The notes under the pieces were generated by a model. The model saw nothing but the letters and a program-made list of their open reading frames with translations. It was not told the origin of the DNA and did not search any database. Of a stretch of 64,000 nucleotides of DNA, positions 1 to 42,406 are shown one piece after another. The DNA is taken from the IMG/VR virus record IMGVR_UViG_3300036944_001289, positions 1-64,000 of that record, one strand, 5' to 3'. Position 1 is the first letter of the stretch; each line of letters opens with the position of its first letter. A program made the translations under genes and the position numbers.

Positions 1-312
1 ACAGACCCCGGCATAACCAGAGACCCAGGCTTTACCATAGACCTCGGCATTACCACAGACCTTGGCATTACCATAGACCATGGCATTACCAGAGACCCTG
101 GCATTATCACAGACCAAGGCATTACCATAGACCTCGGCATTACCACAGACCTTGGCATTACCATAGACCATGGCATCACCATAGACCTCGGCATCACCGG
201 AGACCCAGGCTTTACCAGAGACCTCGGCATTACCATAGACCATGGCATTACCAGAGACCTTGGCATCACCATAGACCTCGGCATCACCGGAGACCTCGGC
301 ATTATCATAGAC
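1..312 (-). repeat. 18-nt degenerate tandem repeat encoding V[YSC]G[ND]Ax hexapeptides
   Basis: Period-18 units such as accatagacctcggcatt / accagagacccaggcttt. Confidence 0.9.
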
Positions 313-441
313 GAAACAATCTCCTTCTTGGGAGAGGTTGGATTCAGTCTGAATCCAACCTCCGACAAGGTCATCGGAAATGCGCCGGATTTGTTTCAGG
401 CCGTTTTTTTCTTTACCAGTAAATTCGTATTTCTTTTTCAT
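1..441 (-). CDS. Hexapeptide-repeat (left-handed beta-helix) phage protein, truncated by window start
   Basis: ATG at 441 overlaps the stop of the upstream gene; reads MKKKYEFTGKEKNGLKQIRRISDDLVGGWIQTESNLSQEGDCFVYDNAEVSGDAEVYGDAKVSGNAMVYGNA...; missing from the ORF track because it runs off the edge. Confidence 0.85.
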   Translation of the reverse strand, partial: MKKKYEFTGKEKNGLKQIRRISDDLVGGWIQTESNLSQEGDCFVYDNAEVSGDAEVYGDAKVSGNAMVYGNAEVSGKAWVSGDAEVYGDAMVYGNAKVCGNAEVYGNALVCDNARVSGNAMVYGNAKVCGNAEVYGKAWVSGYAGVC

Positions 442-1650: not shown

Positions 1651-2213
1651 ACTATAGTATATTCTTTAGGTTCAATAGGATTATTATTTTTATCTAGCAT
1701 CCATATACCTGTACGCTCATTAATAGTTAAATTTGGTAGCTTTAGCACTTGCTCCTTTATAAAACACCTATATCGATATTTCTTCTTCAAAACTAATTGG
1801 TAAAGTAAATCACTATTATTTGTTTGTTTTCTTTCTTCTACCTTACGGAGATACTTGGGAGAGGTAACGAAATAACAGTTTTTATCAATATATTCTGGTC
1901 GAATAAAAGAGTTAAAATCAAATTCATCAAAACACTTCCATTTATATTTTCTAAAACAAACAGCAGTATCGATGCATTTATCAGTGATATCTATTAGACT
2001 AATTAATCCAACTTCTTTATATATGCGATTACCGCAATCTATAATAATTTTTTCATTAGCTACTTTACTGCGTATGTGATTTTTTATCGTACTTACATTA
2101 CGTATATTAAACGTACTTATTAAAACAGTATCACCTTTACGTGCCTTATCGATAGCAAAATCGATAAGGCGCTCTGTCTTGCCTGATTGTCTTCCCGATA
2201 TTTCAAGATACAT
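1647..2213 (-). CDS. Small P-loop NTPase-like protein
   Basis: N-terminal SGRQSGKT Walker A; CFDEFD Walker-B-like. Confidence 0.6.
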   Translation of the reverse strand: MYLEISGRQSGKTERLIDFAIDKARKGDTVLISTFNIRNVSTIKNHIRSKVANEKIIIDCGNRIYKEVGLISLIDITDKCIDTAVCFRKYKWKCFDEFDFNSFIRPEYIDKNCYFVTSPKYLRKVEERKQTNNSDLLYQLVLKKKYRYRCFIKEQVLKLPNLTINERTGIWMLDKNNNPIEPKEYTIV

Positions 2214-2523
2214 GCTTTGTTATATTATTGCGTAGGTCTTCTTCGGTGATTATACCTGTAATCTTTTCTACCACCTGTCTGTTCTTTAGAACGACTGTAG
2301 TGGGTAGTGAACGAATATTATGTTCACTCATGAAACTAAACTCATCTGTATTGATTTTACCAAAAACTGCTCTTCCAATAAACTCTTTAGCAACCCTATC
2401 AAATATAGGGCTATAGGCTTTACAAGGACCACACCAGTTAGCGTAATAATCAATCACTACTATATTATTATAATTAATAGTATCTGCAAATGTTTGATCT
2501 GTAATTTGTACAACGTTATTCAT
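2203..2523 (-). CDS. trxA: Thioredoxin
   Basis: WCGPC active site, IRSLPT cis-Pro motif, 106 aa. Confidence 0.93.
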   Translation of the reverse strand: MNNVVQITDQTFADTINYNNIVVIDYYANWCGPCKAYSPIFDRVAKEFIGRAVFGKINTDEFSFMSEHNIRSLPTTVVLKNRQVVEKITGIITEEDLRNNITKHVS

Positions 2524-2596: not shown

Positions 2597-3865
2597 TTAT
2601 TTAATAATACCCATACTCTTTAGCAGGGTCAGATTCATTAAGTTCTCATTCACGCTGGCTCCATCATTACCATTAGCTCCAGCACCACCAGTAATAACTG
2701 TACTTGGTACTGCAACTTTAGCAAGCGCCGCAGCAACATCTACGTCACGTCGTGCAGCAATCTCAGCTAGTACCTTCTTCTCTTCTGTGAGAGCACCACC
2801 CAACGCAATGCGTTCCTTTTCAGCTTTCGCAAGTTCAATAACTTGTTTAGCCGTTTCTTCAGCAGCCTGACGTTCAAGTCGTGCCACTTCAAGCTGTTTC
2901 ATGGCCGCAGTCTCAGCAGTTTCTTTATCAAGCTTTGCTACTGATAGGAGCTTTGCAGCTTCAGTTTCAGCAACCTGTTTTTCTTTCTCAGCACGAATAA
3001 CAGCCTCAGCCTTTTCACGATTTGACTTAGCTTCGGTCTCAGCCTTCTCACGAAGACCCTTCTCGATAATCATCAAACGCTGCTGAACCTCACCTTCACG
3101 TTGCGCTTTTGCAGATTCTGCCTGTAAAAATGCTTCCTTCTTTTGTGCAAATTGCTTTCGAGTCTGCTCATCGTATTCAGTCTCAGTAATAGAAAACTGG
3201 GTTACATGAATACCGAGGTGTTTGAGTGGTGAGGTTTGTGAAACGATAGGTTTACCATTCTTATCAACTACTACTTCAGTCGCAAGAACTTTAATTGGGT
3301 TACCCTTTTCGTCAATCTGATCTAGAGTTCGTTCAATACGTCGCATCTCATACAAACCTGCATTCATCTGTTCATATGCAACATTATTAAATTCAGACTT
3401 ACGAGCAGCCTGATTCTCAGATGCACTCATCAGAGGTCCAGAGGCCTTAAGAACGTTTGAAAGATGTCCCCAAACTGAGTTCTTAATAGCATCGTGATTA
3501 CCACCGAAACGGCGATGGAATTCACGCTTATTGTCAACTGTAGGGGGTGATGCAAATGAAATCATAGCATCAACATCTGCGGTACCACCGTCATTAAACG
3601 TTACACGAGTCGACTCATCTGTAGGAGACTCATTCGTGATCTCCCTCGTAAACTCAAACTGCCAGTTACGAGGGTATGTCCAGACAGTGCCGTACCATTT
3701 ACCATACCATCCAGGATTATCAATAATTCGAACCGTTCCATTAGGGTATTGCAGCACCTGCCAATCTTGGTCGTCATTATGACCGACAGCACCACTAAAT
3801 ACAAGGATACCACCAATAACGACAGCACCGACGCTTGCGAGTTTAATTATATTTTTTAGTTCCAT
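2597..3865 (-). CDS. SPFH/band-7 (flotillin-like) membrane protein
   Basis: N-terminal TM helix, SPFH-like core, long AE-rich coiled coil, VAVPSTVITGG tail. Confidence 0.75.
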   Translation of the reverse strand: MELKNIIKLASVGAVVIGGILVFSGAVGHNDDQDWQVLQYPNGTVRIIDNPGWYGKWYGTVWTYPRNWQFEFTREITNESPTDESTRVTFNDGGTADVDAMISFASPPTVDNKREFHRRFGGNHDAIKNSVWGHLSNVLKASGPLMSASENQAARKSEFNNVAYEQMNAGLYEMRRIERTLDQIDEKGNPIKVLATEVVVDKNGKPIVSQTSPLKHLGIHVTQFSITETEYDEQTRKQFAQKKEAFLQAESAKAQREGEVQQRLMIIEKGLREKAETEAKSNREKAEAVIRAEKEKQVAETEAAKLLSVAKLDKETAETAAMKQLEVARLERQAAEETAKQVIELAKAEKERIALGGALTEEKKVLAEIAARRDVDVAAALAKVAVPSTVITGGAGANGNDGASVNENLMNLTLLKSMGIIK

Positions 3866-3909
3866 AATTTATTATATTTAACAATTAAAATTTTACAAAA
3901 TTTCCTTGA

Positions 3910-4149
3910 TTACTTTTTAATATTTGATACTCTATGTTTTTCAGCATTGATCTTTTGCTGTGTTTTATCTAACGTGCTATTATAGTTATTAGCACGTTTA
4001 TTGGCAATATCAAATTCGCTTTGAATTGTAGAAGCATCAGTTTTCTTTGAAAGATTGCTAAGAAAACGGTCAAATGCCGCGCTAGTAAAGATCTTCCAGA
4101 TTGCTACCCCGGTAAGACCTAAAAATAAGAAGAGTAATATGTATCTCAT
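3910..4149 (-). CDS. Small membrane protein with coiled coil, probable SPFH partner
   Basis: N-terminal TM helix; directly upstream of the SPFH gene. Confidence 0.6.
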   Translation of the reverse strand: MRYILLFLFLGLTGVAIWKIFTSAAFDRFLSNLSKKTDASTIQSEFDIANKRANNYNSTLDKTQQKINAEKHRVSNIKK

Positions 4150-4178
4150 ACACCCTTATATTATAGAATTTCCTAGGA

Positions 4179-4409
4179 TTACTTTCTAGGTATTCTTCTT
4201 AAGAATAAAGCATATGTTAGAGATATACCTAACATAATCATACCATATGAATCAGGTTCAGGTACAGGGGGTCTAGGTTTACCTCCAGGCCCCCAACCAT
4301 TACCATTATTATCAAAATACACGATATCTGACCAGTCAGCAGGTATCATATCCTGTGAGTATGTAGTATATGATATACAAAGCAATATACTAAAGAGCAA
4401 TCTCTTCAC
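4179..4409 (-). CDS. Minimal PEP-CTERM protein (signal peptide + VPEP-TM-RR tail)
   Basis: Probable GTG start at 4409 after TAAATA; MKRLLFSILLCISYTTYS...PVPEPDSYGMIMLGISLTYALFLRRIPRK. Confidence 0.8.
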   Translation of the reverse strand: MKRLLFSILLCISYTTYSQDMIPADWSDIVYFDNNGNGWGPGGKPRPPVPEPDSYGMIMLGISLTYALFLRRIPRK

Positions 4410-4417
4410 ATTATTAT

Positions 4418-4999
4418 TTACATTCCTAGACTTATACCACAAGGTACATCATCTTCACCTGCCATACCTAAGTAATCTGACTTAGTTGTGCCGTCAGAAT
4501 ACTCTGTAACACGTGATCTACCACCCATAAAGTCTGAGTAATAAGTTCGGACCGGGGTCGGTTCTGTTATACTATCTTCATACATCTCATCATCGATAGA
4601 TCTACTCCAATTTCTTTTAAAGGTTCTGGGTTGTTCAGTTACTGAGCAATTGGTTTGTGATCGATGAAAAAGGCACTCACCATCTTCATTTCGTTTCATA
4701 TATCTTTCACCTTTGCGTACATACCTACCAGCAACTTTCCAGTCCATATATGTCTGAAACTCATTCTCAATCTTAGACTTTTTAGGCTTACTAGGTTGTA
4801 CCTTCTTACTCTCTCTCAATCTACCTGGAAGTATAACTCTAAGCTCGTTTGGGTTAAAGCAAACATTACACTTACAATTATATGGTCGTACATAGATATT
4901 ATTTGGAGCAATATCTACTACAACACCATCACGTACGTTCTCAGGAAACTCACTACGGGGTGCTTTTTGTGTATAAACTACTATATCTCCTATTTTCAT
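4418..4999 (-). CDS. hypothetical protein (N-terminal SH3/KOW-like)
   Basis: MKIGDIVVY start typical of phage SH3-like domains. Confidence 0.55.
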   Translation of the reverse strand: MKIGDIVVYTQKAPRSEFPENVRDGVVVDIAPNNIYVRPYNCKCNVCFNPNELRVILPGRLRESKKVQPSKPKKSKIENEFQTYMDWKVAGRYVRKGERYMKRNEDGECLFHRSQTNCSVTEQPRTFKRNWSRSIDDEMYEDSITEPTPVRTYYSDFMGGRSRVTEYSDGTTKSDYLGMAGEDDVPCGISLGM

Positions 5000-5537: not shown

Positions 5538-6710
5538 TTAATCTACTCCTACTCCATCTCTAATACCGATAACGTATGGAAATCTTGGCGCACCTTCAGC
5601 ACCAATACCAAAATACTTTACCTTAGCATACTTACCTTTAAATGTTTGTTTATTATCTAGTAGTTCCTTTAGATATTCATGAGAGCCTTTTACATTTGAG
5701 TTAAACTTATTATCGATATCACTATGGTTGTATCCGTAATTCTTAACAGCGTAGTTAATATCATCGATATCTTTTAGCAAGATAAATCGACCACACATAC
5801 CTGTTTTATTACCTTCACCTTCTTCAATATCAATAATATAATACTCTTTCTCATCGAAATCTTTTCGTTTTAGAAGATTAGAAGAGCGTTTATTTTCATA
5901 TGGCTTATTAAGGCGAATAATCTGCCCTTCATATCCAAGCTCCATAAACTGTTCATAATAGCGATTTACTTCATCTTCATTATTACAGTGATAAGAAGGA
6001 GCAATACAAATTACATTATTAATTATACCAGGCTGCAAACACTCAGATAGAATACTATTAAGCTTTTCTAAACGCTGTGAATAATTAAGTACAGTATCAA
6101 TAATGTCATAGATATGATACTGAATAGTATTAGCAGATTCTTCAATATCAGCTACAGTAGGCTTAGTCTTCTTAATAAGACTCATTATCTTTTCGAAGTT
6201 ATTATTGAGCTTATGACAATAAAGCTCTCCATCGAAAATGATATCAGGATACTTATCAAACACTGGCTGAAGTGCTTTTGAGATATGTTGTGCAGTCTTC
6301 CAAGGCTTGCCGTTTCTCGAAAACGGGCCAGTAATGCCATGTACAGAACGAGCACCATCGTACTTCATATTTACCCATACTGGATACATTACCTTATCTT
6401 TTCTATCAGCCCAATTCTTAGCAAGCATAGGCTCTACAAAATGAACCTTATCGATATCATCGATATTTAGCCAATAGCCAGATTCAAGCTTGCGTTTAAA
6501 GATTGCTTGTGCTTCAAACTCTGCTTGCTCTTCTGCATTACGAGCATTAGCTCTACCTTCATTGGTAGTGTATGTATTATACCATTCTGTGGTTTGAATA
6601 GCACCTCCAAGCTGTCCGTAAACGGTACGGTATTTTGCACCTTCTGTTTCTATATACCAGGTCTGAATAGCACCTGTTGAGGTACGACTATAAAGTGTAG
6701 AGTATTTCAT
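5538..6710 (-). CDS. lig: ATP-dependent DNA ligase
   Basis: EPMLA, motif I KYDGAR, FDGELY, YHIYD, GYEGQIIR, LLKRK, C-terminal PRFP. Confidence 0.92.
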   Translation of the reverse strand: MKYSTLYSRTSTGAIQTWYIETEGAKYRTVYGQLGGAIQTTEWYNTYTTNEGRANARNAEEQAEFEAQAIFKRKLESGYWLNIDDIDKVHFVEPMLAKNWADRKDKVMYPVWVNMKYDGARSVHGITGPFSRNGKPWKTAQHISKALQPVFDKYPDIIFDGELYCHKLNNNFEKIMSLIKKTKPTVADIEESANTIQYHIYDIIDTVLNYSQRLEKLNSILSECLQPGIINNVICIAPSYHCNNEDEVNRYYEQFMELGYEGQIIRLNKPYENKRSSNLLKRKDFDEKEYYIIDIEEGEGNKTGMCGRFILLKDIDDINYAVKNYGYNHSDIDNKFNSNVKGSHEYLKELLDNKQTFKGKYAKVKYFGIGAEGAPRFPYVIGIRDGVGVD

Positions 6711-8222: not shown

Positions 8223-8789
8223 TTATCCTCCGTAATAACTACCCTTACCTTCAACCCAAAAAGCTCGAACATTCTCTTCAAGCCAATCAAATTTTAGGAG
8301 TGGAGATTCGTCTTTAAAGTCTTCTAAATAAACATGATTTATAAATAGACCATCGTACTTATTACCATCTTCAACACAAGTTACACATGGAAAAGATTTT
8401 GGAAAATCCTCGTTACGCTTTAACGTATTTAAATCAACATCCAAATCAGAAGCAATATATGTAACACCATCACCATCTTCGTCTGGATTGTAAACCAATC
8501 CCAAACTATAAAGAAGTGTTTCAGCAGAATAGCCCTCAAATATACCTCTCCAATAAAACATATCTTCTCCGTATTCTTTCTCTGCCTTTTCATAAACTTC
8601 AAAACATTTCTTCCACTCTTGGAAGTTTTCTTCTCTGAACTCCTTATCATCTACCTTAGAGATAAACGGCATATCTTCTTTTTTCCATACATGTGCTGCC
8701 GCATTATATGCACGCAAATGAGTAAAGATGCAAGCAGTTCTTACAAATTTAATATAATCATGTTCAGTTTGAAATGTTAGTTTGATCAT
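8223..8789 (-). CDS. hypothetical protein
   Basis: 188-aa coupled ORF. Confidence 0.6.
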   Translation of the reverse strand: MIKLTFQTEHDYIKFVRTACIFTHLRAYNAAAHVWKKEDMPFISKVDDKEFREENFQEWKKCFEVYEKAEKEYGEDMFYWRGIFEGYSAETLLYSLGLVYNPDEDGDGVTYIASDLDVDLNTLKRNEDFPKSFPCVTCVEDGNKYDGLFINHVYLEDFKDESPLLKFDWLEENVRAFWVEGKGSYYGG

Positions 8790-9535
8790 AGTACTTTCTT
8801 ATCGTTGTTGTAGTCTTTATAAGGTGAGTCTTCGGGTCCGTTCATAAACTCAGAAGTAAATCCTTCTCTTTTACCGTGATGATCTACAAGACCATGTGGT
8901 CTATTTTTGAGATGAGCTTTTACTTCAGTTAAACTAATGGGCTTTCCAAATGATTCTATACCAACGTCAAGTTGTCTACCGTTACCAGTATTCTTATTTG
9001 ATATAGGGTAATTACCATGACAATGACCAGAAAGATGAATAGAGCCTTTATTTTGACAATTCCAAGAGCCAATAGGGTAATGACTCAATACCATATGCGT
9101 ATCTTTATTTATCCTTAGTTCAATATAGTTTGGTATATATATTACTCTACGTCCTTCAAACTCAGTAACCAATGGAAAGATATCCACTTCAGGTGCAATA
9201 TATGGGTAAAGCTTAAGCTTATTAGTTTTATACATCTGCCTCCAACCTGATGTATGGTTACCAGGTAGAAGAAAAAGAGTATGAAATTTTAGACGTCTAA
9301 ATAGATTTTGAATCTTCTTACCATCTGGATCACCAAATACAAAGTCTCCAAGATGAAAAGCTATAGAGTCATAAGTACATGTTTCATTCCATTTACCGAT
9401 TATACCTTCAAGTGCGTCATTACAAGAAGTATAACCTCTTGGTTTATATACAAAGTCTTTATCATGATGAAAGTGGCAATCACTTACAAAGAATATATCA
9501 TTTTCAGGGTGTGTAATAGTATAGATATCACTCAT
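8786..9535 (-). CDS. Calcineurin-like metallophosphoesterase
   Basis: SDCHF, LGDF, PGNH, SHYP, GHCH motifs. Confidence 0.88.
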   Translation of the reverse strand: MSDIYTITHPENDIFFVSDCHFHHDKDFVYKPRGYTSCNDALEGIIGKWNETCTYDSIAFHLGDFVFGDPDGKKIQNLFRRLKFHTLFLLPGNHTSGWRQMYKTNKLKLYPYIAPEVDIFPLVTEFEGRRVIYIPNYIELRINKDTHMVLSHYPIGSWNCQNKGSIHLSGHCHGNYPISNKNTGNGRQLDVGIESFGKPISLTEVKAHLKNRPHGLVDHHGKREGFTSEFMNGPEDSPYKDYNNDKKVL

Positions 9536-10444: not shown

Positions 10445-12031
10445 TCAGAGAGCTTTATTAATGCTCTCATTTACTCGCGCTCGAATATCGGCTAGAGTAT
10501 AATCAATCAACAGCTTACCATCTCGGAAGACCTCTTTAAGATCGCAGTTATCAGCAACGACCTTGGTAACTTCGTCGTGGAGGACATAATCACCTTTGTC
10601 GTTCTTAAACACTGCAAGATAACCCTTAGCAGACTTCTTCATACCACCATCAGTCTTAGGATCCTTAAAGATCGCACGCTCTTCACCATTTACGGTTACC
10701 GATGTTGCCTTCATTGCAAATCCAAGAGTATCACGAGTACAATACTGATAGGTATAAGAACCAACACCGAGAACGACGTTAGTACTTGCGAACCCTTTCT
10801 TCATCAACCCTTCCATGATTTGATAGGCGCGCTCGAGTGTAATCGAGTCACCATAAATCAAACCAATGTGAGAGTCAAGAACTTTGAATCCTTTCTCAGT
10901 TACAGTACCACCGAACGTGTCCCAAAGGCACTGGATAGCTCCTTTGAATTCAGCTTCGGTGATCTCTTTTCCTGGTATCGCTTTAATCAGTGATGTGTTA
11001 TCGTCAAGGAAAATCTTACTGTCCTTTCGAATGACTTCGTCTTCATTGTAACCACAGATGATTCGAATAGGATCGCCAGAGTCAGGTCGGATTACAACCT
11101 TATCTCCAACAGGTCCACCTTTACGAGCGAGAATCTCGTTCTTAAGAGCAGGTAAGAATACTGTGATAACCTGCCAGAAGTCCCAAGTGTCGGATACAAT
11201 TGAGACAATACCTTGTGGATATAACTCAGTAATAAGACGTTTAAAGGTATAGAGTTCATCACCTTGACCACCAGCACACATTACAGAGTGTTCAGTCGCA
11301 GGTACCGAACAACCGACTAGCTCCTTATCAGAGTTAGCATTATAGTAATCTTCGAGTAGATCGATCGCAGGGATCGTATCGGTACCGAGATTACCAGCTG
11401 CAAGGTGAGCAGCACCAGACATTACCGCGTCCTGAGGGCTAGACATACCACGGAAGCTAAAATCGTGAGCTTGGAAGTCAACGAAATTAACATCAGCACC
11501 GGTAAGCTTTGCATATCTCTTAAGAAGAATACGATACTTACGAGCGGTTGTAGCACTGGTACAAGGCTTCCAAATCATATTACTCAAGATAGTCTCGAGA
11601 TAATTAGTAAGCCAAAAAGCACCTGAGGTGGTATTTTCGATAACAAACACCGGAATCTTCTCATCAACTACAGCACCCTCAGGTAGGGCACTAATAGAGA
11701 TTGGAAGATAACCGATGTCGTGTAACTGTTCGATATGATCAATAGGTACAGCTCCAGTACCTAGGTAGTTATCAAGACGGCGCTTATACTTCTTTATAAC
11801 CTTTTCTTTAGGCTGATTGAAGAACTCCTGATTAAAGGTATCAATAAGCAACCACTTTAGAAGATATTGAAGGCCAAAGAATACTACTTTATTATCAACT
11901 CCTTTTACTTTTGCAGCGTGTCTAGTAGAACGCGGGGTAAAGTTAGAGTAAACCAACTCAGTACCTACTGGATATTGACGACGATGGTCGGCTTTATAGC
12001 CATCGATTAGATTTAGCGGATTAGTTTTCAT
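10445..12031 (-). CDS. nadV: Nicotinamide phosphoribosyltransferase-like protein (NadV/Namat)
   Basis: DGYKADH, YSNFTPRS, HDFSFRG, SVPATEHSVM, SIVSDTWD, IRPDSGDP, GLIYGDSIT, KDPKTD..KKSAKG. Confidence 0.93.
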   Translation of the reverse strand: MKTNPLNLIDGYKADHRRQYPVGTELVYSNFTPRSTRHAAKVKGVDNKVVFFGLQYLLKWLLIDTFNQEFFNQPKEKVIKKYKRRLDNYLGTGAVPIDHIEQLHDIGYLPISISALPEGAVVDEKIPVFVIENTTSGAFWLTNYLETILSNMIWKPCTSATTARKYRILLKRYAKLTGADVNFVDFQAHDFSFRGMSSPQDAVMSGAAHLAAGNLGTDTIPAIDLLEDYYNANSDKELVGCSVPATEHSVMCAGGQGDELYTFKRLITELYPQGIVSIVSDTWDFWQVITVFLPALKNEILARKGGPVGDKVVIRPDSGDPIRIICGYNEDEVIRKDSKIFLDDNTSLIKAIPGKEITEAEFKGAIQCLWDTFGGTVTEKGFKVLDSHIGLIYGDSITLERAYQIMEGLMKKGFASTNVVLGVGSYTYQYCTRDTLGFAMKATSVTVNGEERAIFKDPKTDGGMKKSAKGYLAVFKNDKGDYVLHDEVTKVVADNCDLKEVFRDGKLLIDYTLADIRARVNESINKAL

Positions 12032-36050: not shown

Positions 36051-37478
36051 ATGGGATCATTTGATTCAAATGTAGTGGTAAATTATCAGACTTTAGAATA
36101 TAATAAGTTTATACAAATAACTAACAATACTCAATTCCCTCCTGTTTCTGTAGTACGATTTAGTTCGCCTGATACAGTAGGGGTACAACCAGTTAGTTCA
36201 ATGGATGTATATTCTAAATACGCTGTTCTGGTTAAAAATGTTGATAACACTACTGCAAATTATACCGGTAACTTGAATATGGCAAGTGATGCGTTTGGTC
36301 GTACAAGAACATCTAGTCCATTAACTCTTTTTGATTCATCATTTAGATATGGTGATAACAGTCTTTGGTCTAATCTTACAGGTGGTACTACATCGACATC
36401 TGCTTCTGCTCAATTTATTCAAGCTCAAGGATTAATAGAGTTAAGAGTCGATGCATTAAGTGGTTCAAAAATATATAGAGAGACAACAAAAGTATTTTCT
36501 TATCAACCGGGTAAGAGTCTTCAAATAATGAATTCATTTAGTTTCAATCAAGCTAAATCTAATTTAAGACAGCGCACTGGTTATTTTGGTAATGATAACG
36601 GTATATATCTAGAATTAGATGATAGTACGCTTTATATGGTTGAACGTAGCATTACAAGCGGTTCAGTTGTATCTAATCGTATATCACAATCACAATGGAA
36701 TGTAGATCGACTTGATGGTACAGGTCCATCAGGTATTATTTTAGATATTACTAAATCACAAATTTTGTTTGTAGATATAGAGTGGCTTGGTTTAGGTACA
36801 GTTAGAACAGGCTTTATTATAAATGGTCAGTTTATACCTTGTCACTATTTTCATCATGCTAACGTAATTGATGTCACTTATATAACTACAGCTTCACTAC
36901 CTCTTAGATATGAGATAGAAAATAAAGCTGCTACAGCAAGTCCTAGTAAATTGAAGCAAGTATGTAGCACAGTAATATCTGAAGGTGGTTACGAATTAAG
37001 AGGTTTACAACAATCTGTTGGTACATTAATAACCGCACCAAAGAGTCTTGTTACAGCAGGCACATACTATCCTGTAATAACCATAAGATTGAGACCAAGT
37101 AGATTAGATGCTATTGTCATTCTAACAGCAATATCGTTAATGGGTGATGGTACAGGTATTTATAGTTGGAAGGTTATTGCTAGTGGTGTTTCAGCAGGTG
37201 GTACCGGTACATGGATAGATGCAGGTGGTAGCTCTTCTGTACAGTATAAACTTGACGCCACTAGTATAACAGGTGGTAGGGTACTAGCATCTGGTTACTT
37301 TAGTTCTAACGCTCAAGGTTCTACAACAATAGATATATTGAAAGAAGCTTTATTTAAGTTCCAACTTGAGAGAAATAGTTTTACCGGTGAATCTTATGAA
37401 CTAACACTTGCTGTAACAGCAAGTACTGATGTTGAGGTTGTTTACGGTTCTGTTGATTGGGAAGAGGTAAGTAGATAA
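36051..37478 (+). CDS. Virion structural protein
   Basis: DAFGRTRTSSPLTLFDS, YQPGKS, WNVDRLDGTGPSG, EWLGLG.VR.GF motifs; TAAATA upstream. Confidence 0.75.
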   Translation: MGSFDSNVVVNYQTLEYNKFIQITNNTQFPPVSVVRFSSPDTVGVQPVSSMDVYSKYAVLVKNVDNTTANYTGNLNMASDAFGRTRTSSPLTLFDSSFRYGDNSLWSNLTGGTTSTSASAQFIQAQGLIELRVDALSGSKIYRETTKVFSYQPGKSLQIMNSFSFNQAKSNLRQRTGYFGNDNGIYLELDDSTLYMVERSITSGSVVSNRISQSQWNVDRLDGTGPSGIILDITKSQILFVDIEWLGLGTVRTGFIINGQFIPCHYFHHANVIDVTYITTASLPLRYEIENKAATASPSKLKQVCSTVISEGGYELRGLQQSVGTLITAPKSLVTAGTYYPVITIRLRPSRLDAIVILTAISLMGDGTGIYSWKVIASGVSAGGTGTWIDAGGSSSVQYKLDATSITGGRVLASGYFSSNAQGSTTIDILKEALFKFQLERNSFTGESYELTLAVTASTDVEVVYGSVDWEEVSR

Positions 37479-37491
37479 TTTATTCTTTGTT

Positions 37492-37568
37492 TGGTGCTCA
37501 GGGAGGGATTTGAACCCATCACTATTCGGCTTCTAAGACCGACGCCTCTACCGTTGGGCTACCTGAGC
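37492..37568 (-). tRNA. tRNA-Leu(UAG), short variable loop
   Basis: Cloverleaf, TCGGT-CT TAG AA-GCCGA, CCA encoded. Confidence 0.85.
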
Positions 37569-37697
37569 ATATCCGTTACTTATCGGGCGAACGGAACGAA
37601 GGCCATATCCGAAGCCATAAGGCTTGGAGGTTACGGTTACAGAAGGCGAACTGCTGGACTTGCCTTGTTGAGTCGAACTCAGCCATTACCGTCAAAT

Positions 37698-37773
37698 TGG
37701 TCAGGAGCCAGAGAATCAAACTCTGCCACCCAGGTTCACAGCCTAGTATGCTAATCACTACATCATCTCCTGA
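37698..37773 (-). tRNA. tRNA-His(GUG)
   Basis: CTAGG-CT GTG AA-CCTGG; U-1/A73 rather than G-1/C73. Confidence 0.8.
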
Positions 37774-37871
37774 TAAAAGCTTTCGGTAAGTTTCTTCCCC
37801 TATACGGCTGAAATTGAAGTCATTCAGTTGTTCCAAGGTTTACACCACCAGCTTCAATTCTGGTCCGAAAG

Positions 37872-37947
37872 TGGAGCACCAGGTCGGATTTGAACCGACA
37901 TGAATCAGGGTTGCAATCTGAGCCGTAGCCTTTCCGGTCACTGGTGC
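37872..37947 (-). tRNA. tRNA-Cys(GCA)
   Basis: TCAGA-TT GCA AC-CCTGA, U73, CCA. Confidence 0.85.
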
Positions 37948-38022
37948 ATATTCTTTCGGATTGCAATTCCATCCGCCGAACTCAACGGCAGCATGCCTTG
38001 GTGCCAGATGGCCGAAAGAAAG

Positions 38023-38101
38023 TGGTGGGGGCAACCGGAATGCGAGCCGGCATTTTACCTGTGAGAGAGGTATGTCCTTTACGTTTTTAGACGATGTCCC
38101 C
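38023..38101 (-). tRNA. tRNA-Glu(CUC), atypical T-loop
   Basis: TACCT-CT CTC AC-AGGTA, CCA. Confidence 0.75.
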
Positions 38102-38329
38102 ATAAATTGAGAACTTTTCAGTAGTATCGGTGATTAGACTTTCTGAAAAGAAAGAACAGACTTAAATCTAAAGATATACATCTTGGTTTCACCTACCATT
38201 GTTCTATTCTCAAATTTGTAGTTCGACCGACGGGATTCGCACCCGCGGGCAGACACTTTGCCAGCTTCTCTGCCTTACTAAACGGCGTCACGATCGAACA
38301 TACTCGAAGATAATTAGTCTTCGAGAAAG

Positions 38330-38405
38330 TGGTGTCCCGTGGAAGAGTCGAACTTCCATCGTTCGGTCCGTAGCCGAAGGTTCTGATCCATTGAACTAAC
38401 GAGAC
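38330..38405 (-). tRNA. tRNA-Arg(ACG)
   Basis: TTCGG-CT ACG GA-CCGAA, CCA. Confidence 0.9.
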
Positions 38406-38411
38406 ATAAAG

Positions 38412-38487
38412 TGGTGGAGAATACCGGCTTTGCTCCGGTCACCTATTGCTTGCAAAGCAATTGCTCTACTGAATGAGCTAACTCCCC
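38412..38487 (-). tRNA. tRNA-Ala(UGC)
   Basis: G3:U70, TTGC-TT TGC AA-GCAA, CCA. Confidence 0.88.
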
Positions 38488-38518
38488 AATAAACTCTCCC
38501 TGAATTATGCTTCAATGC

Positions 38519-38554
38519 TATAATGTAAGTAATTGCGCAATTACTTACATTATA
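38519..38554. repeat. Perfect 36-bp palindrome
   Basis: tataatgtaagtaattgc|gcaattacttacattata. Confidence 0.9.
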
Positions 38555-38588
38555 TTATGCATGAGAGGCACAGAGAGACTACTAAAAA

Positions 38589-38936
38589 TTATTGCTCTTT
38601 AAGCTTTCTATCAACATACGTTTTAAGATACTCTTTTAATTGAGATTTGTCTTGCCTTTTATCTCTCTCGATTATATTATCTATATATGTAAATAAAAAC
38701 TTTTGAGCTTCTTCTAAGCTACTTGTTGTAAACGTCTCACCATATGGCACGTTACGGAAATCATTAGATCCATTGACCAAAGGTAAGTACGTACCATCAT
38801 CTTTTTTTGTAACAGAGAGACGTCGACATTTATAATCTGGATACACCCAATTGAAAGGTTGTTGTTCTATATCAAGAACAACATGCCATTGATTTGGTTT
38901 ATCGAGTAAAGGACATCTGTATCTAGCTTTTCCCAT
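38589..38936 (-). CDS. hypothetical protein
   Basis: GGAAC-N5-TAAAAT motif upstream. Confidence 0.6.
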   Translation of the reverse strand: MGKARYRCPLLDKPNQWHVVLDIEQQPFNWVYPDYKCRRLSVTKKDDGTYLPLVNGSNDFRNVPYGETFTTSSLEEAQKFLFTYIDNIIERDKRQDKSQLKEYLKTYVDRKLKEQ

Positions 38937-38959
38937 ACCAAATTTTATTTTTGTTCCTT

Positions 38960-39148
38960 CTAACAGTGGTAATTAATAAATCTATTTGCTTGTTTCTTAG
39001 TAAGTGTGTCTCTACTTGAAGTAAAAGATCTTGCTTTAGAACAAGTTATCTTACCTTTACCAAAGCGTTTAGTTACCTTTGCTTTAAATCTTCCAGGATG
39101 TCTAGCTTTATGTATATTGGCTTCAAAAAATAAACTAAACGTGATCAT
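38960..39148 (-). CDS. Small basic protein, possible internal head protein
   Basis: MITFSLFFEA N-terminus; K/R-rich. Confidence 0.55.
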   Translation of the reverse strand: MITFSLFFEANIHKARHPGRFKAKVTKRFGKGKITCSKARSFTSSRDTLTKKQANRFINYHC

Positions 39149-39543
39149 TTTATTCTTAGACCTTCTGCTCTTAGAAATTTAAAGAAACTGGGTGCATCGT
39201 TTTCATATTTATCGTTAATTTCTATACTCATCTTATCTGTAGTCTTAGGGTTTGTACCTACTAATATCATCGTTATCTCTCTACTATCTTCAAAAGTATC
39301 TATAGCGTAAAATATGTTTAGAGGTTTTTCTTCTAGTTTTTTAATGATTGCTTGCTTTTTATCGTGTCTATTCAAACCGACAATACTTACTGTATCTTCT
39401 AAACTTTTACTAAAAAGACGTTGTATAGTGTTGTCGTAATCATCAGCCATCCAGAACATTATATAATAATCATCTGTTGTATCGTATCTTTTTGTAAACG
39501 CTATTTCAGTTAGATACTTTTCACTTATAATCTTGTCTTCCAT
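39145..39543 (-). CDS. Late protein, hypothetical
   Basis: TAAATA before MEDKIISE. Confidence 0.55.
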   Translation of the reverse strand: MEDKIISEKYLTEIAFTKRYDTTDDYYIMFWMADDYDNTIQRLFSKSLEDTVSIVGLNRHDKKQAIIKKLEEKPLNIFYAIDTFEDSREITMILVGTNPKTTDKMSIEINDKYENDAPSFFKFLRAEGLRIK

Positions 39544-39578
39544 ACTATTATTTATTAGATACAGTATCAATACAAAAA

Positions 39579-39673
39579 TGGCGGAGGGTGAGGGAATTTA
39601 ACCCTCACCGGCTTTTAAGGTCCGGTTTTGTTTAGCAAACAAATGTAGCAAGAACAATATCTACCTACCCTCC
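39579..39673 (-). tRNA. tRNA-Ser(GCU)
   Basis: TTTGT-TT GCT AA-ACAAA, long V-arm, G73, CCA. Confidence 0.85.
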
Positions 39674-39676
39674 AAA

Positions 39677-40009
39677 TTATTTTAGCTTAATAAGGCACTC
39701 ACCGTATGCTTCAAGTTCACCTGTTACTTTTTGAAATTCAGCCTGTGTCATACTCTTCCAACTTCTCAGTTTAGAAAAGCATTGATCTGCTTTAGATTCA
39801 ATAAATTTTGGATTCTCTATATTTTTAATACATTCTTTGTATGGTATTTCTTTTGCTTTAAAGTGTTGAGCTGTAAGCAGTGATGGACCACCTTTTGCTC
39901 TTGCAGATGCTTCTATCTTTTTTGCACCTTTAGATCTAACATTGAAAAATTCTTGATTCTTTGCATCAAGGTTGGATAGAGTCTTTTCTATTAGAAGATC
40001 AAAATTCAT
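39677..40009 (-). CDS. Late protein, hypothetical
   Basis: TAAATA before MNFDLLIEKTL. Confidence 0.6.
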   Translation of the reverse strand: MNFDLLIEKTLSNLDAKNQEFFNVRSKGAKKIEASARAKGGPSLLTAQHFKAKEIPYKECIKNIENPKFIESKADQCFSKLRSWKSMTQAEFQKVTGELEAYGECLIKLK

Positions 40010-40020
40010 TTAATTATTTA

Positions 40021-40350
40021 TTAATCTATCTTTTGCAAAGCTATTCTATACATGAAAGATGTTGCACCGCCAGGGTATATATTAAGATGTATTACCTTTA
40101 GTTTCACTCCTTGCTCTTCAGCTAATTTAAGTATATTTTTTGTATATAAATTACCTGCTTTTGCAGCAACTGCATAATGCTTTTTAACTGTCTCTTCTTT
40201 ATTTTTACGTTTAGCTAAACTTCTGATTATATTAGAATCCGGATTATCAGGGTTAATATAAAGATTACTATCAGGTGTTATATAATCTTCATACTTTTTA
40301 AGTACGCTACCTTCGCGTGATAACATACTTTGTATCATGTGTTTACCCAC
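40021..40350 (-). CDS. Late protein, hypothetical
   Basis: TAAATA upstream. Confidence 0.5.
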   Translation of the reverse strand: MGKHMIQSMLSREGSVLKKYEDYITPDSNLYINPDNPDSNIIRSLAKRKNKEETVKKHYAVAAKAGNLYTKNILKLAEEQGVKLKVIHLNIYPGGATSFMYRIALQKID

Positions 40351-40376
40351 TATTATATTTAGTTAAGAAATAAAAA

Positions 40377-40450
40377 CATCCAGCGTAAGAATCGAACTTA
40401 CCGCATTGAGTTTTGGAGACTCTATCGCCTACCTTGGAACATGGCTGGAT
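40377..40450 (-). tRNA. tRNA-Trp(CCA), CCA end not encoded
   Basis: GAGT-CT CCA AA-ACTC, T-arm GTAAG-TTCGATT-CTTAC. Confidence 0.8.
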
Positions 40451-40453
40451 AAA

Positions 40454-40527
40454 TGGTTGGCCTAGAGGGAATTAAACCCCCATTTCTCGCTAATCAGGCA
40501 AGCACACTATCATTGTGTTATAGGCCA
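40454..40527 (-). tRNA. tRNA-Ile(GAU)
   Basis: CTTGC-CT GAT TA-GCGAG (U37), CCA. Confidence 0.8.
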
Positions 40528-40528
40528 G

Positions 40529-40604
40529 TGGCTGGAGCTCTCGGTATCGATCCGAGATCTTCTGCTCTTCATGCAGACGTGAGCACCTGCTTCACCAAAC
40601 TCCA
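40529..40604 (-). tRNA. tRNA-Phe(GAA)
   Basis: TCTGC-AT GAA GA-GCAGA, CCA. Confidence 0.8.
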
Positions 40605-40796
40605 ATATGAGTTATTTAATAATCTACAGTGTCAACTCATCCACTGCAATGTCGTTCAATCTCTCCGAACTGTCAAGCCTTCTCTTCGTTGGATCAACGG
40701 CGGCTTTCCCTAAATTATTCCAATATTCAGACTTTTACTGCACTCTTTGATCATCACGACTATTGGAAATCGATGTGTTTTCTTTGTTAACAAAAA

Positions 40797-41087
40797 TTAT
40801 TTAAATTCCGAACTATCATATACATTACATAATAATGTAGCAAGTTCTTCTACTACATCTATTCTTTTTTCGTTTATTGGAGCATAATGACATCCAACAA
40901 ACTCTAAATCATCTATTAATTCACCAAGTAATCTATCCTGACTTTTTTCTCCATTTATAAAAACGGAATATGTTATTGCTCCAAAATTTATAGGATCTCG
41001 TTTTGCAACGAATTCAACATCTTTTATAGATGGATTTTTTTCCTTCATTTTGACTTTAATACGTTCAAGCGTTTCGTTTCTATTCAT
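40797..41087 (-). CDS. hypothetical protein
   Basis: ORF directly downstream of tmRNA. Confidence 0.55.
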   Translation of the reverse strand: MNRNETLERIKVKMKEKNPSIKDVEFVAKRDPINFGAITYSVFINGEKSQDRLLGELIDDLEFVGCHYAPINEKRIDVVEELATLLCNVYDSSEFK

Positions 41088-41091
41088 AAAA

Positions 41092-41479
41092 TGGTGGAGG
41101 TGGCGGGAATTGAACCCGCGTGTTTAACCCAAACCTCACTATTATCTACAAGCTTAGTAGTATTTAATAACTATTTTAAGGTATACTACAACCTGTAGAT
41201 AGTGGTATACATTTATATACTAGAGAATCCCAATGTATAACTGACTCTCTAATCTCACTATATAACGAAATTAAATTTTAGTGAGAATCAAATCTAGTTT
41301 CGATCGCTGTTTATTAAGCAGCGAATGCAAGGGCCTCAACAGGAGCAGCGCTCTTGAAGAAGTTCTTGATGTAATTTACAATGTTGCCATTTGTAGTTTT
41401 GATACTAGTTATAGAGATAATATCAATCTCTGCTTGCAAATAGAGCTGTATCGAATTAAGTCGAATCCTGTACACCCCC
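41092..41479 (-). ncRNA. ssrA: tmRNA
   Basis: 5' GGGGGTGTACAGGATTCGAC, 3' CGCGGGTTCAATTCCCGCCACCTCCACCA with G3:U70; internal tag ORF ...GNIVNYIKNFFKSAAPVEALAFAA*. Confidence 0.93.
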
Positions 41480-41604
41480 ATAAATTGGTCCCAAGTAAGG
41501 GTCGTCAATCTTACAATCCTACTATTACGTTTGGATGCCCTCTACCAGAGCCCAATCGAAAAGGGTCTAGTTTTTCCGGATTTCTACCGTACAACCTGAG
41601 AAAA

Positions 41605-41682
41605 TGGTAGGAGATAAGGGGCTCGAACCCTTCTGTTAATCGCTATGTAAAAGCGGTGACCAACCCTGCAGTCCCATCTCCT
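41605..41682 (-). tRNA. tRNA-Val(UAC)
   Basis: CGCT-TT TAC AT-AGCG, CCA. Confidence 0.8.
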
Positions 41683-41688
41683 GTAAAT

Positions 41689-41767
41689 TGGTGCATCAGA
41701 TGGGATTTTAACCCATGTAAATCTCGTTAAGAGCGAGGACCGTTAAACGAACTCCGGGCACTGATGC
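41689..41767 (-). tRNA. tRNA-Lys(CUU)
   Basis: CTCG-CT CTT AA-CGAG, CCA. Confidence 0.8.
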
Positions 41768-41858
41768 ATAAAGGTAGCAACATTAGGTCTTTGCTTTCCT
41801 ATAATTTCCTTATACCTGACTTAGCGCTGAGTATTATAGGTTAGTTGCTTTCGCAAAA

Positions 41859-41934
41859 TGGAGCATCGTGTGAGATTCGAACTCACGGAATCCTCTTTGG
41901 AAGAGAGGCGCACTAACCACTATGCGAACGATGC
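41859..41934 (-). tRNA. tRNA-Gly(UCC)
   Basis: CCTCT-CT TCC AA-AGAGG, U73, CCA. Confidence 0.9.
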
Positions 41935-41994
41935 ATAAATTACACGTACCCATTATTCACATTGATAACAAGAGGTATAGTACGTATGTTAAAG

Positions 41995-42087
41995 TGGAGG
42001 AGAGTGAGGGATTTGAACCCGTCGGGGCTTTTGAGGACCCTTCTATTTTCAAGATAGATGCCATAAACCGTACTCGGCCAACTCTCC
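41995..42087 (-). tRNA. tRNA-Ser(UGA)
   Basis: TCTAT-CT TGA AA-ATAGA, long V-arm. Confidence 0.85.
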
Positions 42088-42094
42088 ATAAAAA

Positions 42095-42169
42095 TGGCTG
42101 CCCGCCGTGGTTACGATCCACGCTCACCTGATTAACAGTCAGGGGTACTCGCCAGAATACGAGCAGGCA
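42095..42169 (-). tRNA. tRNA-Asn(GUU)
   Basis: CCTGA-CT GTT AA-TCAGG, G73, CCA. Confidence 0.85.
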
Positions 42170-42176
42170 ATAAAAA

Positions 42177-42266
42177 TTTATATCTAATGTTCTACCATGT
42201 TGAACTATCCTCCTTGTTCTATTGGGTAAGAGAGGAGCGGACCTTGAACCCGCATCTTTAGATAAA
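42177..42266 (-). ncRNA. Circularly permuted tRNA-like RNA without anticodon
   Basis: ATCTAA, T-arm GCGGG-TTCAAGG-TCCGC, TCCTC/GAGGA acceptor closed by a loop, D-arm GTTC-AACATGGTA-GAAC, TTAGAT. Confidence 0.7.
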
Positions 42267-42326
42267 GAGACTGGGTCTGCATAACAGACCCGAAAGCTCA
42301 CTGTACGCTTGGTACATGAACAAAAA

Positions 42327-42401: not shown

Positions 42402-42406
42402 AAAAA

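What the first reader, a model, noticed from the sequence alone, without database searches (positions are those of the whole stretch)
4179..4420. Phage-encoded, late-expressed minimal PEP-CTERM protein
Seen: a 76-aa protein made of a signal peptide, ~30 residues of passenger and a VPEP-TM-basic tail, preceded by TAAATA. Established: PEP-CTERM is the exosortase sorting signal of EPS-producing Gram-negatives (abundant in Verrucomicrobia, Planctomycetes, some Proteobacteria and Cyanobacteria). Inference: a decoy that saturates host exosortase or remodels the surface (superinfection exclusion, receptor masking, release). It is also a host-range clue.
Basis: partly seen in the sequence, partly recalled or inferred. 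Interest (0 to 1): 0.6.

Follow-up and report, generated by a model that had tools for sequence, protein, structure and literature searches.

The report
Phage-borne miniature PEP-CTERM protein family
A 209-kb T4-like phage from a shale-gas metagenome encodes a 76-residue exported peptide that is little more than a signal peptide plus a bacterial PEP-CTERM (exosortase) sorting tail. It belongs to a rare, unnamed family found so far only on contigs of uncultured phages, which suggests these phages engage their hosts' surface-protein sorting enzyme.

Summary
On the minus strand, GTG 4409 to stop 4179-4181 encodes 76 aa: a signal peptide, about 30 unstructured residues, then VPEP, a transmembrane helix and RRIPRK. 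The tail passes both curated models (PF07589 22.5 vs 20.7 bits; TIGR02595 16.3 vs 16.0). It is the only such hit in the complete 209,282-bp genome (E 2e-5).

The protein is not an orphan. It belongs to a rare family of about 29 clusters of 44-97-aa proteins sharing ADWS, GWGxGG, KPKPVVPEPxxYG, a helix and RR. Every member with at least 5 kb of context (10 contigs plus this genome) sits in phage-like DNA of several lineages. The mini-gene is the only gene these loci share.

The "TAAATA" is part of a genome-wide signature. TAAATA-N5-ATG occurs 51 times against 7.5 expected, on capsid, baseplate and fibre genes. A gp55 late sigma factor is present. The closest relative keeps ATAAATA-N5-GTG.

Late expression from GTG 4409 is therefore plausible, possibly as a leaderless mRNA.

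The tail resembles the VPEPxxY tails of Beta- and Gammaproteobacteria. The host is unidentified, the phage has no exosortase, and the decoy or surface-remodelling function is untested.

The parts
4179..4409 (-). CDS of the 76-aa mini PEP-CTERM protein (GTG start 4409-4407, TAA stop 4181-4179)
   Evidence: ORF. Homologues align from residues 1-7 of this form. tblastn aligns residue 1 to the GTG at L013:2929.
4356..4409 (-). Signal peptide, residues 1-18 (K-R, hydrophobic core, T-Y-S before the predicted cleavage site)
   Evidence: Hydropathy segment 1-16. AF2 helix 2-17. An N-terminal hydrophobic segment is present in 17 of 22 family members, and those shown have a small-x-small site at the aligned position. 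The cleavage itself is inferred.
4266..4355 (-). Passenger, residues 19-48: family motif A-D-W-S near the mature N-terminus, a G/N-rich linker with GWGxGG, and a basic/proline run before VPEP
   Evidence: Alignments A1 and A4. No secondary structure, pLDDT 49-67. The match of 'VYFDNNGNG' to SdrD_B/GEVED repeat proteins is at motif level only.
4182..4265 (-). PEP-CTERM sorting domain, residues 49-76: VPEP, transmembrane helix, RRIPRK
   Evidence: PF07589 22.5 bits vs 20.7; TIGR02595 16.3 vs 16. Genome scan hit at 4194-4268. P50, E51, P52 and G56 are invariant, and V49 and Y55 are at least 90% conserved, in 22 sequences.
4415..4421 (-). GTAAATA, a T4-type late-promoter-like element exactly 5 nt upstream of the GTG. 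It overlaps the stop codon of the upstream gene.
   Evidence: The relative L013 has ATAAATA-N5-GTG at the same place. The T4 late promoter lies at -13..-6 (PMC1524935).
5038..5045 (-). Perfect TATAAATA 38 nt upstream of the 193-aa gene that directly precedes the PEP gene (possible co-transcription)
4418..4999 (-). Upstream 193-aa gene of unknown function. It is syntenic in the two closest relatives only.
   Evidence: Not found next to the mini-gene in the other lineages.
3910..4149 (-). Downstream 79-aa protein with one N-terminal transmembrane segment. It is conserved next to the PEP gene in the closest relatives (65% identity).
   Evidence: No PHROG match.
2597..3865 (-). SPFH/Band_7 membrane protein (422 aa), third gene of the cassette conserved in the closest relatives (90% identity)
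   Evidence: phrog_11908 E 2e-54. Band_7. Identity.
4172..4190 (.). 7-bp-stem inverted repeat over the stop codon of the PEP gene, function unknown

Best explanation
The gene encodes a member of a previously undescribed, phage-borne family of miniature PEP-CTERM proteins.

Shown:
- The 76-aa product is a signal peptide, about 30 unstructured residues and a bona fide PEP-CTERM tail.
- The family is conserved but fast-evolving.
- It occurs on phage-like contigs of several unrelated lineages as a stand-alone, moron-like gene.
- In this phage the start codon carries the same NTAAATA-N5 signature as the virion genes, and a gp55 late sigma factor is encoded.

Inferred:
- The protein is made late, probably from a leaderless or near-leaderless mRNA starting at GTG 4409. 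Read-through from the TATAAATA upstream of the preceding gene is also possible.
- It is exported by Sec and cut after T-Y-S. That leaves a type-I membrane peptide with about 30 residues in the periplasm, a helix in the inner membrane and RRIPRK in the cytoplasm.
- Its PVPEPxxYG junction is then presented to the host's exosortase.

The passenger is too small and too variable to be an enzyme or adhesin, and selection is strongest on the recognition junction. I therefore take the exosortase interaction itself to be the function. Either the peptide occupies the enzyme as a competitive substrate or decoy, which lowers sorting of host PEP-CTERM matrix proteins and loosens EPS or floc around the infected cell before lysis. 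Or the peptide is processed and placed on the envelope, which alters the surface.

I favour the competitive-substrate version, but the evidence does not separate the two.
For: - Tail identity: PF07589 and TIGR02595 both score over their curated cut-offs. It is the only hit in the genome, at E 2e-5. Every NCBIfam family listed for this protein is a PEP-CTERM family. The nearest protein-language-model cluster is an 84-aa 'PEP-CTERM sorting domain-containing protein' of Pseudomonadota.
- Family: 20 HMMER hits and 29 profile hits among billions of proteins. PEP and G56 are invariant across 22 sequences. 20 of 22 members hit TIGR02595 and 15 of 22 hit PF07589.
- Phage contexts.
- The mini-gene is the only gene shared across these loci.
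- Tail type: the tail matches ordinary PEP-CTERM proteins of exosortase-bearing Burkholderiales, Rhodocyclales and Gammaproteobacteria. One example is a 127-aa Aromatoleum protein ending PPVPEPDTYAMLL....
- Late signal: TAAATA-N5-ATG occurs 51 times against 7.5 expected, and 49 of 51 sites open ORFs. It sits on capsid, baseplate wedge, adaptor, tail fibre and virion protein genes. It is absent from polymerase, ligase, NAMPT, clamp loader and HNH genes.
- gp55 lies at genome position 122373-122822. T4 late promoters lie at -13..-6.
- The GTG start and the motif are both conserved in L013.
- The passenger is unstructured.
Against: - The host is unknown, so no exosortase partner has been shown. 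The phage itself has none.
- Shine-Dalgarno motifs are not enriched upstream of this phage's ORFs (19 of 309 against a 5.5% background). This is unusual for phages of typical Proteobacteria and leaves the proteobacterial host clue unconfirmed.
- The HMM margins are small because the models have only 24 positions.
- The promoter element has G where most sites have A. Its neighbours are DNA-metabolism genes rather than virion genes.
- A GTG start on a leaderless mRNA is inefficient in E. coli (established knowledge).
- Five distant family members lack a signal peptide. They would need YidC-type insertion of the N-tail.
- No RNA data exist.
- The biochemistry of exosortase is itself largely unproven.
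Confidence: 0.6

Rival explanations
1. It is a plain small membrane protein. The PEP-CTERM-like tail serves only as a transmembrane anchor with a positive-inside tail. The protein acts in the inner membrane, for example in superinfection exclusion like T4 Imm or as a partner of the adjacent 79-aa and SPFH membrane proteins, with no exosortase involved.
For: The cassette PEP gene - 79-aa TM protein - SPFH is conserved in the two closest relatives. No exosortase is known for the unidentified host. The HMM margins are small. Small two-segment membrane proteins are common in T4-like phages (established knowledge).
Against: In the other lineages the mini-gene occurs without the SPFH or 79-aa neighbours. 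A bare anchor does not explain the invariant P-E-P..G and near-invariant V and Y across 22 divergent sequences. Nor does it explain hits to many independent PEP-CTERM models.
Confidence: 0.25
2. It is a lysis protein: a class II holin or pinholin-like protein (two hydrophobic segments and a charged C-terminus), or a unimolecular spanin (N-terminal outer-membrane signal plus C-terminal transmembrane segment).
For: The protein is small (76 aa), has two hydrophobic segments, a basic C-terminus and a late-promoter-like signal. The 79-aa neighbour has an N-terminal TM segment followed by a hydrophilic region rich in charged residues, which superficially resembles an i-spanin.
Against: - The loop between the hydrophobic segments is 30-60 residues, low-complexity and variable in length, unlike holin hairpins.
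- Five members have no first segment at all.
- There is no lipobox. The residue before the Cys is L or V, and several members have no Cys.
- About 30 periplasmic residues are too few to span the periplasm (inference).
- No adjacent endolysin is present in the window locus.
Confidence: 0.07
3. It is not a real gene, or the PEP-CTERM match is a chance resemblance in an AT-rich genome.
For: The protein is short and the HMM has only 24 positions. The public gene call differs (56 aa, ATG 4349).
Against: Full-length homologues at 29-53% identity lie on independent phage contigs, including syntenic ones. The genome-wide E-value is 2e-5. The start signal is conserved.
Confidence: 0.02

Closest known systems
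PEP-CTERM / exosortase protein-sorting system (TIGR02595, PF07589; EpsH/Xrt enzymes)
   Same: N-terminal signal peptide and a C-terminal P-E-P motif, transmembrane helix and basic cluster at the extreme C-terminus. Both curated HMMs score over their cut-offs.
   Different: It is encoded by a phage, as a single copy, with no exosortase in the same genome. The passenger is only about 30 unstructured residues. The junction PVVPEPxxYG is far more conserved than is usual between bacterial PEP-CTERM proteins.
Small bacterial PEP-CTERM proteins of floc-forming Beta-proteobacteria (PepA type, NF033554; e.g. the 127-aa Aromatoleum protein in L021 next to a SurA-like gene)
   Same: Low-complexity Gly/Asn/Ser-rich passenger and a tail of the PPVPEP[AD][TS]Y type. 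Six family members hit the floc_PepA model through the tail.
   Different: No homology outside the tail. The bacterial proteins are longer (127-353 aa) and sit in EPS/exosortase loci of cellular genomes.
PEP-CTERM domain protein HOG10 of Dehalococcoides IME1 elements (bioRxiv 10.64898/2026.09.15.751708)
   Same: A mobile, virus-like element reported to carry a PEP-CTERM domain protein with a signal peptide or TM segment.
   Different: It belongs to a filamentous or budding-virus-like integrative element, not a tailed lytic phage. I did not compare the sequences.
T4 Imm and other small T4-type membrane proteins; Pf3/M13 coat-like N-out, C-in peptides
   Same: Size, one or two hydrophobic segments and a positive-inside C-terminus. 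The signal-less family members would insert like Pf3 coat (inference).
   Different: No sequence similarity was found to any deposited phage genome. Those proteins have no PEP motif.
T4-type late promoters (TATAAATA at -13..-6; CTAAATA in phage Aeh1; PMC1524935)
   Same: An NTAAATA element in front of virion genes, with gp55 present.
   Different: Here the element lies exactly 5 nt from the start codon at 51 ATG sites, which would make the late mRNAs leaderless. I have not seen this described for T4-like phages (my knowledge; I ran no literature search on this point).

Membership tests
PEP-CTERM sorting domain (TIGR02595 / PF07589) | Score over the curated cut-off of the domain HMM | tested here: met
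   PF07589 22.5 vs 20.7 bits. TIGR02595 16.3 vs 16.0 for the 76-aa form and 15.9 for the 87-aa form. Among 22 family members, 20 hit TIGR02595 at E<=0.1 and 15 hit PF07589 at E<=0.01.
PEP-CTERM sorting domain (TIGR02595 / PF07589) | P-E-P motif, then a hydrophobic helix, then a basic cluster, at the extreme C-terminus | tested here: met
   PEP at residues 50-52 with 24 residues after it. Hydrophobic segment at 54-70 and 4 K/R in the last 12 residues. AF2 helix 52-72 with block-mean pLDDT about 80-90.
PEP-CTERM sorting domain (TIGR02595 / PF07589) | N-terminal signal peptide (the protein must cross the inner membrane) | tested here: met
   K-R plus a hydrophobic core at 1-16 and a T-Y-S site. 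The feature is present in 17 of 22 members. No dedicated signal-peptide predictor was available. Five distant members lack it.
PEP-CTERM sorting domain (TIGR02595 / PF07589) | An exosortase (EpsH/Xrt) in the same cell | not testable with these tools
   No PF09721 match in the phage. The host is unidentified. Bacteria with the most similar tails do carry exosortases (Aromatoleum, Aquincola MAG).
PEP-CTERM sorting domain (TIGR02595 / PF07589) | Exosortase-dependent processing of the tail | not testable with these tools
   This needs an experiment. The in-silico complex with an Aromatoleum exosortase gave no verdict.
T4-type late gene (gp55-dependent promoter) | TATAAATA-like element at the right distance, as on the genome's virion genes | tested here: met
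   GTAAATA-N5-GTG. The NTAAATA-N5-start signature occurs 51 times against 7.5 expected, on structural genes. There is one mismatch to the commonest form (G for A). G, C and T also occur at real gene starts.
T4-type late gene (gp55-dependent promoter) | The phage encodes the late sigma factor and its co-activator | tested here: inconclusive
   A gp55 homologue was found (phrog_234, E 8e-28; genome 122373-122822). The gp33 Pfam model found nothing, but it also rang in no control genome.
T4-type late gene (gp55-dependent promoter) | A transcript appearing late in infection and starting downstream of the element | not testable with these tools
   No RNA run holds this DNA.
Class II holin / pinholin | Two transmembrane segments joined by a short turn | tested here: not met
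   The loop is 30-60 residues, of variable length and low complexity. The first segment is absent in 5 of 22 members.
Unimolecular spanin | N-terminal lipoprotein signal with a lipobox ([ILMFTV]-x-[GAS]-C) | tested here: not met
   The residue before the Cys is L here, and V or L in relatives. Several members have no Cys.

The most novel reading that the evidence does not exclude
Phages of exosortase-bearing bacteria carry a dedicated, horizontally mobile 'anti-exosortase' or exosortase-hijacking peptide. It is a minimal natural substrate, made late, that jams or exploits the PEP-CTERM sorting pathway. The effect would be to dismantle or re-label the EPS and floc matrix around the infected cell. 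This would be a new class of phage host-takeover gene. It would also supply a roughly 30-residue natural probe for the still unproven chemistry of exosortases.
Probability: 0.3. Interest if true: 0.75.

Novelty: new variant of a known kind. Interest (0 to 1): 0.6.

Why it matters
PEP-CTERM/exosortase is one of the most widespread bacterial surface-sorting systems. It has been linked to EPS, flocs and biofilms. Even so, what the enzyme does to its substrates is still mostly inference.

I found no report of a tailed phage encoding such a substrate. No family member exists in 50,697 deposited phage genomes.

A family of phage genes reduced to signal peptide, linker and PEP-CTERM tail implies that the sorting step itself is a target during infection. 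It also provides a minimal natural substrate whose fate can be followed by mass spectrometry.

The tail type could serve as a marker for linking uncultured phages to exosortase-bearing hosts.

As a by-product, the genome suggests that a T4-like phage can place its late promoters so that late mRNAs are leaderless.

Tried and rejected
- **Complex prediction.** The mature peptide (residues 21-76) with an Aromatoleum exosortase (L032:1441-2367:-) returned 'no answer', score 0.00. This is not evidence either way.
- **Single-sequence word search.** It found only the protein itself.
- **IMG/VR scans.** Scans with the protein, the SPFH neighbour and alignments A2, A3 and A5 found no family member. The one hit was an ordinary 331-aa PEP-CTERM protein on a 7-kb high-GC contig.
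- **Deposited phage genomes.** tblastn with four family members gave no match.
- **Host identification.** This failed.
  - The closest cultured phages are only 30-34% identical in polymerase, portal and capsid (cyanomyophages, Pelagibacter phage Mosig).
  - There is no psbA.
  - Relatives cannot be drawn for a virus record.
  - Markers from L019 and L014 hit no phage with an informative host.
  - The shale Verrucomicrobium 'Ca. Marcellius' has 62% GC, so it is an unlikely host for a 33% GC phage.
- **Large repeat proteins.** The hits P0003, P0004, P0007 and P0009 were rejected as relatives. They share only the 'VYFDxNGNG' loop motif of SdrD_B/GEVED repeats, and the score accumulates over many repeats.
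- **Microdiversity.** A second contig is 100% identical, so it gives no test of the start codon.
- **Sigma-70 promoter and terminator scan.** Uninformative.
- **Bacteroidota-type TAnnTTTG and sigma-70 TTGACA-N17-TATAAT motifs.** Not enriched upstream of ORFs.
- **Read laying.** Not used: no RNA run holds the locus, and contigs cannot show transcript ends.

Full report
**What is there.**
- The feature lies on the minus strand. The open frame runs 4179..4442.
- Three starts are possible: TTG 4442 (87 aa), GTG 4409 (76 aa) and ATG 4349 (56 aa, the public gene call).
Residues 1-18 are K-R plus a hydrophobic core ending T-Y-S. Residues 19-48 are the passenger. V-P-E-P is at 49-52, a hydrophobic helix at about 54-70, and RRIPRK at the end.
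- AlphaFold2 with the family alignment gives two helices (2-17 and 52-72). Nothing is ordered between them.

**Is the tail a PEP-CTERM signal?**
- PF07589 scores 22.5 bits against a gathering score of 20.7.
- TIGR02595 scores 16.3 against 16.0 for the 76-aa form, and 15.9 if the 87-aa frame is used.
- All further NCBIfam hits to this protein are PEP-CTERM families, matched through the tail.
- A six-frame scan of the whole genome finds this single site at E 2e-5. No control genome scored over the cut-off.
- The margins are small because the models have 24 positions. The family evidence below removes the doubt.

**The genome.**
- The window is the first 64 kb of an IMG/VR virus record of 209,282 bp with a direct terminal repeat (118 bp by my count), 33% GC and 24 tRNA genes.
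- It is a T4-like myovirus. It has a gp43-type polymerase, sheath, gp20-type portal, gp23-type capsid, baseplate wedge, SbcCD, UvsY and the gp55 late sigma factor.
- It is only 30-34% identical to the nearest cultured phages, which are cyanomyophages and Pelagibacter phage Mosig.
- It carries no psbA and no exosortase.
- The DNA is held completely by two 'shale gas metagenome' runs. Small parts are held by lake-water and unlabelled metagenome runs. No RNA run holds it.

**A family, and it is phage-borne.**
- The word search found only the protein itself, so I spent the one exhaustive HMMER search.
- That search returned small full-length homologues (43-55% identity over the aligned parts). It also returned large repeat proteins, which share only a 'VYFDxNGNG' loop motif and were set aside.
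- A profile search brought the family to 29 clusters of 44-97 aa. All are metagenomic, and the only source annotation is 'hypothetical protein'.
- The common plan is: signal peptide, A-D-W-S/G, a variable low-complexity linker often containing GWGxGG, K-P-K-P-V-V-P-E-P-x-x-Y-G, a helix and RR.
- P, E, P and the G four residues on are invariant in 22 sequences. V49 and Y55 are at least 90% conserved.
- 17 of 22 members have the N-terminal hydrophobic segment. Five distant ones have none, with a stop codon directly upstream in the one checked.
- Every member with at least 5 kb of context lies among densely packed, co-oriented small genes with phage hallmarks:
  - two contigs syntenic with the window;
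  - another T4-like contig with gp2, gp59 and a gp33-type co-activator;
  - a 60-kb contig with RNA ligase and radical-SAM/QueC genes;
  - a 39-kb contig with a faint SU10-type portal hit, GP88 and Thy1;
  - a 185-kb contig with ribonucleotide reductase, NAD-ligase and a methylase;
  - 55-56-kb contigs;
  - a contig with NAMPT and NUDIX;
  - an 18-kb contig with ThyX, an exonuclease and a methyltransferase.
- GC content of these loci ranges from 37 to 54%.
- tblastn of all window neighbours against these loci shows that, outside the close relative L013, the mini-gene is the only shared gene. It therefore behaves as a mobile, self-contained unit.
- No member is present in 50,697 deposited phage genomes, or in IMG/VR apart from this record.

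**Start codon and 'late-expressed'.**
- Homologues align from residues 1-7 of the 76-aa form. tblastn aligns residue 1 to a GTG in L013 that Prodigal had missed.
- In this genome, TAAATA followed by exactly 5 nt and ATG occurs 51 times against 7.5 expected. There is a sharp spike at spacing 5, and 49 of the 51 sites open ORFs of at least 50 aa.
- Genes carrying the signature include capsid, baseplate wedge, head-tail adaptor, tail fibre and a virion protein.
- Polymerase, ligase, NAMPT, clamp loader, HNH and RNA-binding genes lack it.
- T4 late promoters are TATAAATA at -13..-6, with variation at the first two positions in other T4-like phages (PMC1524935).
- The PEP gene has GTAAATA-ATAAT-GTG. 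L013 has ATAAATA-TTTCT-GTG.
- The signal therefore supports both the GTG start and late transcription. The N5 spacing would put +1 on the first base of the start codon, which means a leaderless mRNA.
- A perfect TATAAATA also lies 38 nt upstream of the preceding 193-aa gene.
- Caveats: there is one mismatch to the commonest form, a GTG start, DNA-metabolism neighbours and no RNA data.

**Host clue.**
- A scan of one genome per 185,579 species with the patterns ADWS[ND]I[TV]Y and [PDN]PVPEP[AD][TS]Y gave nine confirmed matches.
- All nine records are Pseudomonadota: six Burkholderiales, Aromatoleum, and two MAGs labelled only Gammaproteobacteria or Pseudomonadota.
- The four I inspected are ordinary, longer PEP-CTERM proteins sharing only the tail.
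- Aromatoleum and the Aquincola MAG carry exosortases.
- Two family members hit the PEPxxWA-CTERM model; I did not check which.
- The tail is therefore of the proteobacterial 'PEP-x-x-aromatic-small' kind.
- Against a typical proteobacterial host, Shine-Dalgarno motifs are not enriched upstream of this phage's ORFs. They are only patchily present in the relatives.

**Mechanism.**
- Shown: the architecture, the conservation pattern, the phage context and the start signal.
- Inferred: Sec export, cleavage after T-Y-S, an N-out/C-in peptide, presentation of the junction to the host exosortase, and an effect on sorting or on the surface.
- The strongest constraint lies on the junction PVVPEPxxYG and on a short N-terminal motif. 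The linker changes in length and composition. For example, the SPFH neighbour is 90% identical between the window and L013, against 38-54% for this protein.
- This pattern fits a peptide whose job is the interaction with the sorting enzyme. It fits a structural passenger less well.
- Rivals are a plain membrane anchor working with the 79-aa and SPFH neighbours, a holin or spanin, and chance. They are weighed in their own sections.

**Verdict.**
It is untested on function and host.
- The finding is a new, phage-restricted variant of a known sorting-signal family.

Noticed in passing
whole genome; in the window e.g. 36051, 51390, 53988, 58385 (+) and 4409, 35986, 61686 (-): NTAAATA lies exactly 5 nt upstream of the start codon at 51 ATG sites (7.5 expected, with a sharp spike at spacing 5), mostly on virion genes. 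T4 late promoters lie at -13..-6, so this predicts that the late mRNAs of this T4-like phage are leaderless. The gp55 gene is at genome position 122373-122822.
   Followed up: partly
window 14-31 kb (e.g. upstream of 15033, 17397, 19050, 20031, 28522) and genome 184-206 kb: A second motif, GGAAC, lies mostly 16-19 nt upstream of the ATG in about 30 ORFs of the early/DNA-metabolism regions. GGAACAA occurs 14 times against 1.8 expected. It may be an early or middle promoter or a regulatory site.
   Followed up: no
whole genome: Shine-Dalgarno-like motifs are not enriched upstream of ORFs (19 of 309 against a 5.5% background), and G is depleted at -15..-1. This is unusual for a T4-like phage of a typical proteobacterium and bears on the host.
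   Followed up: partly
window 37492-44944: A cluster of 24 tRNA genes, all on the minus strand, covering 20 amino acids.
   Followed up: no
window 1-441 (-), continuing at the other end of the contig: A 228-aa ORF spans the contig junction. It has about 25 tandem hexapeptide repeats V-[YSC]-G-[ND]-A-x, as in beta-helix proteins. The opposite and shifted frames stay open through the repeat.
   Followed up: partly
window 36051-37475 (+): A virion structural protein (phrog_1645) is 60-62% identical to proteins of marine cyanomyophages and of Puniceispirillum phage HMO-2011. The core genes are only 30-34% identical to any cultured phage, which suggests a recently exchanged structural gene.
   Followed up: partly
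window 2597-4149 (-): An SPFH/Band_7 protein (422 aa, phrog_11908, 90% identical in relative L013) and a 79-aa single-TM protein form a conserved cassette with the PEP gene in the closest relatives only.
   Followed up: partly
window 10445-12031 (-), 2203-2523 (-), 5538-6710 (-), 8786-9535 (-): Auxiliary and DNA-metabolism genes surround the locus: NAMPT, thioredoxin, ATP-dependent DNA ligase and a phosphoesterase.
   Followed up: no
window 4172-4190: A 7-bp-stem inverted repeat overlaps the stop codon of the PEP gene.
   Followed up: no
window 58385-61009 (+): An 874-aa tail-fibre-like protein has RCC1-type repeats in its C-terminal half, with a TATAAATA element 5 nt before its ATG.
   Followed up: no
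L033:7001-7159, and P0030, P0032, P0038: Distant family members have the PEP-CTERM tail but no signal peptide. In L033 a stop codon lies directly upstream. They would need signal-independent (YidC-type) insertion of a short N-tail.
   Followed up: partly
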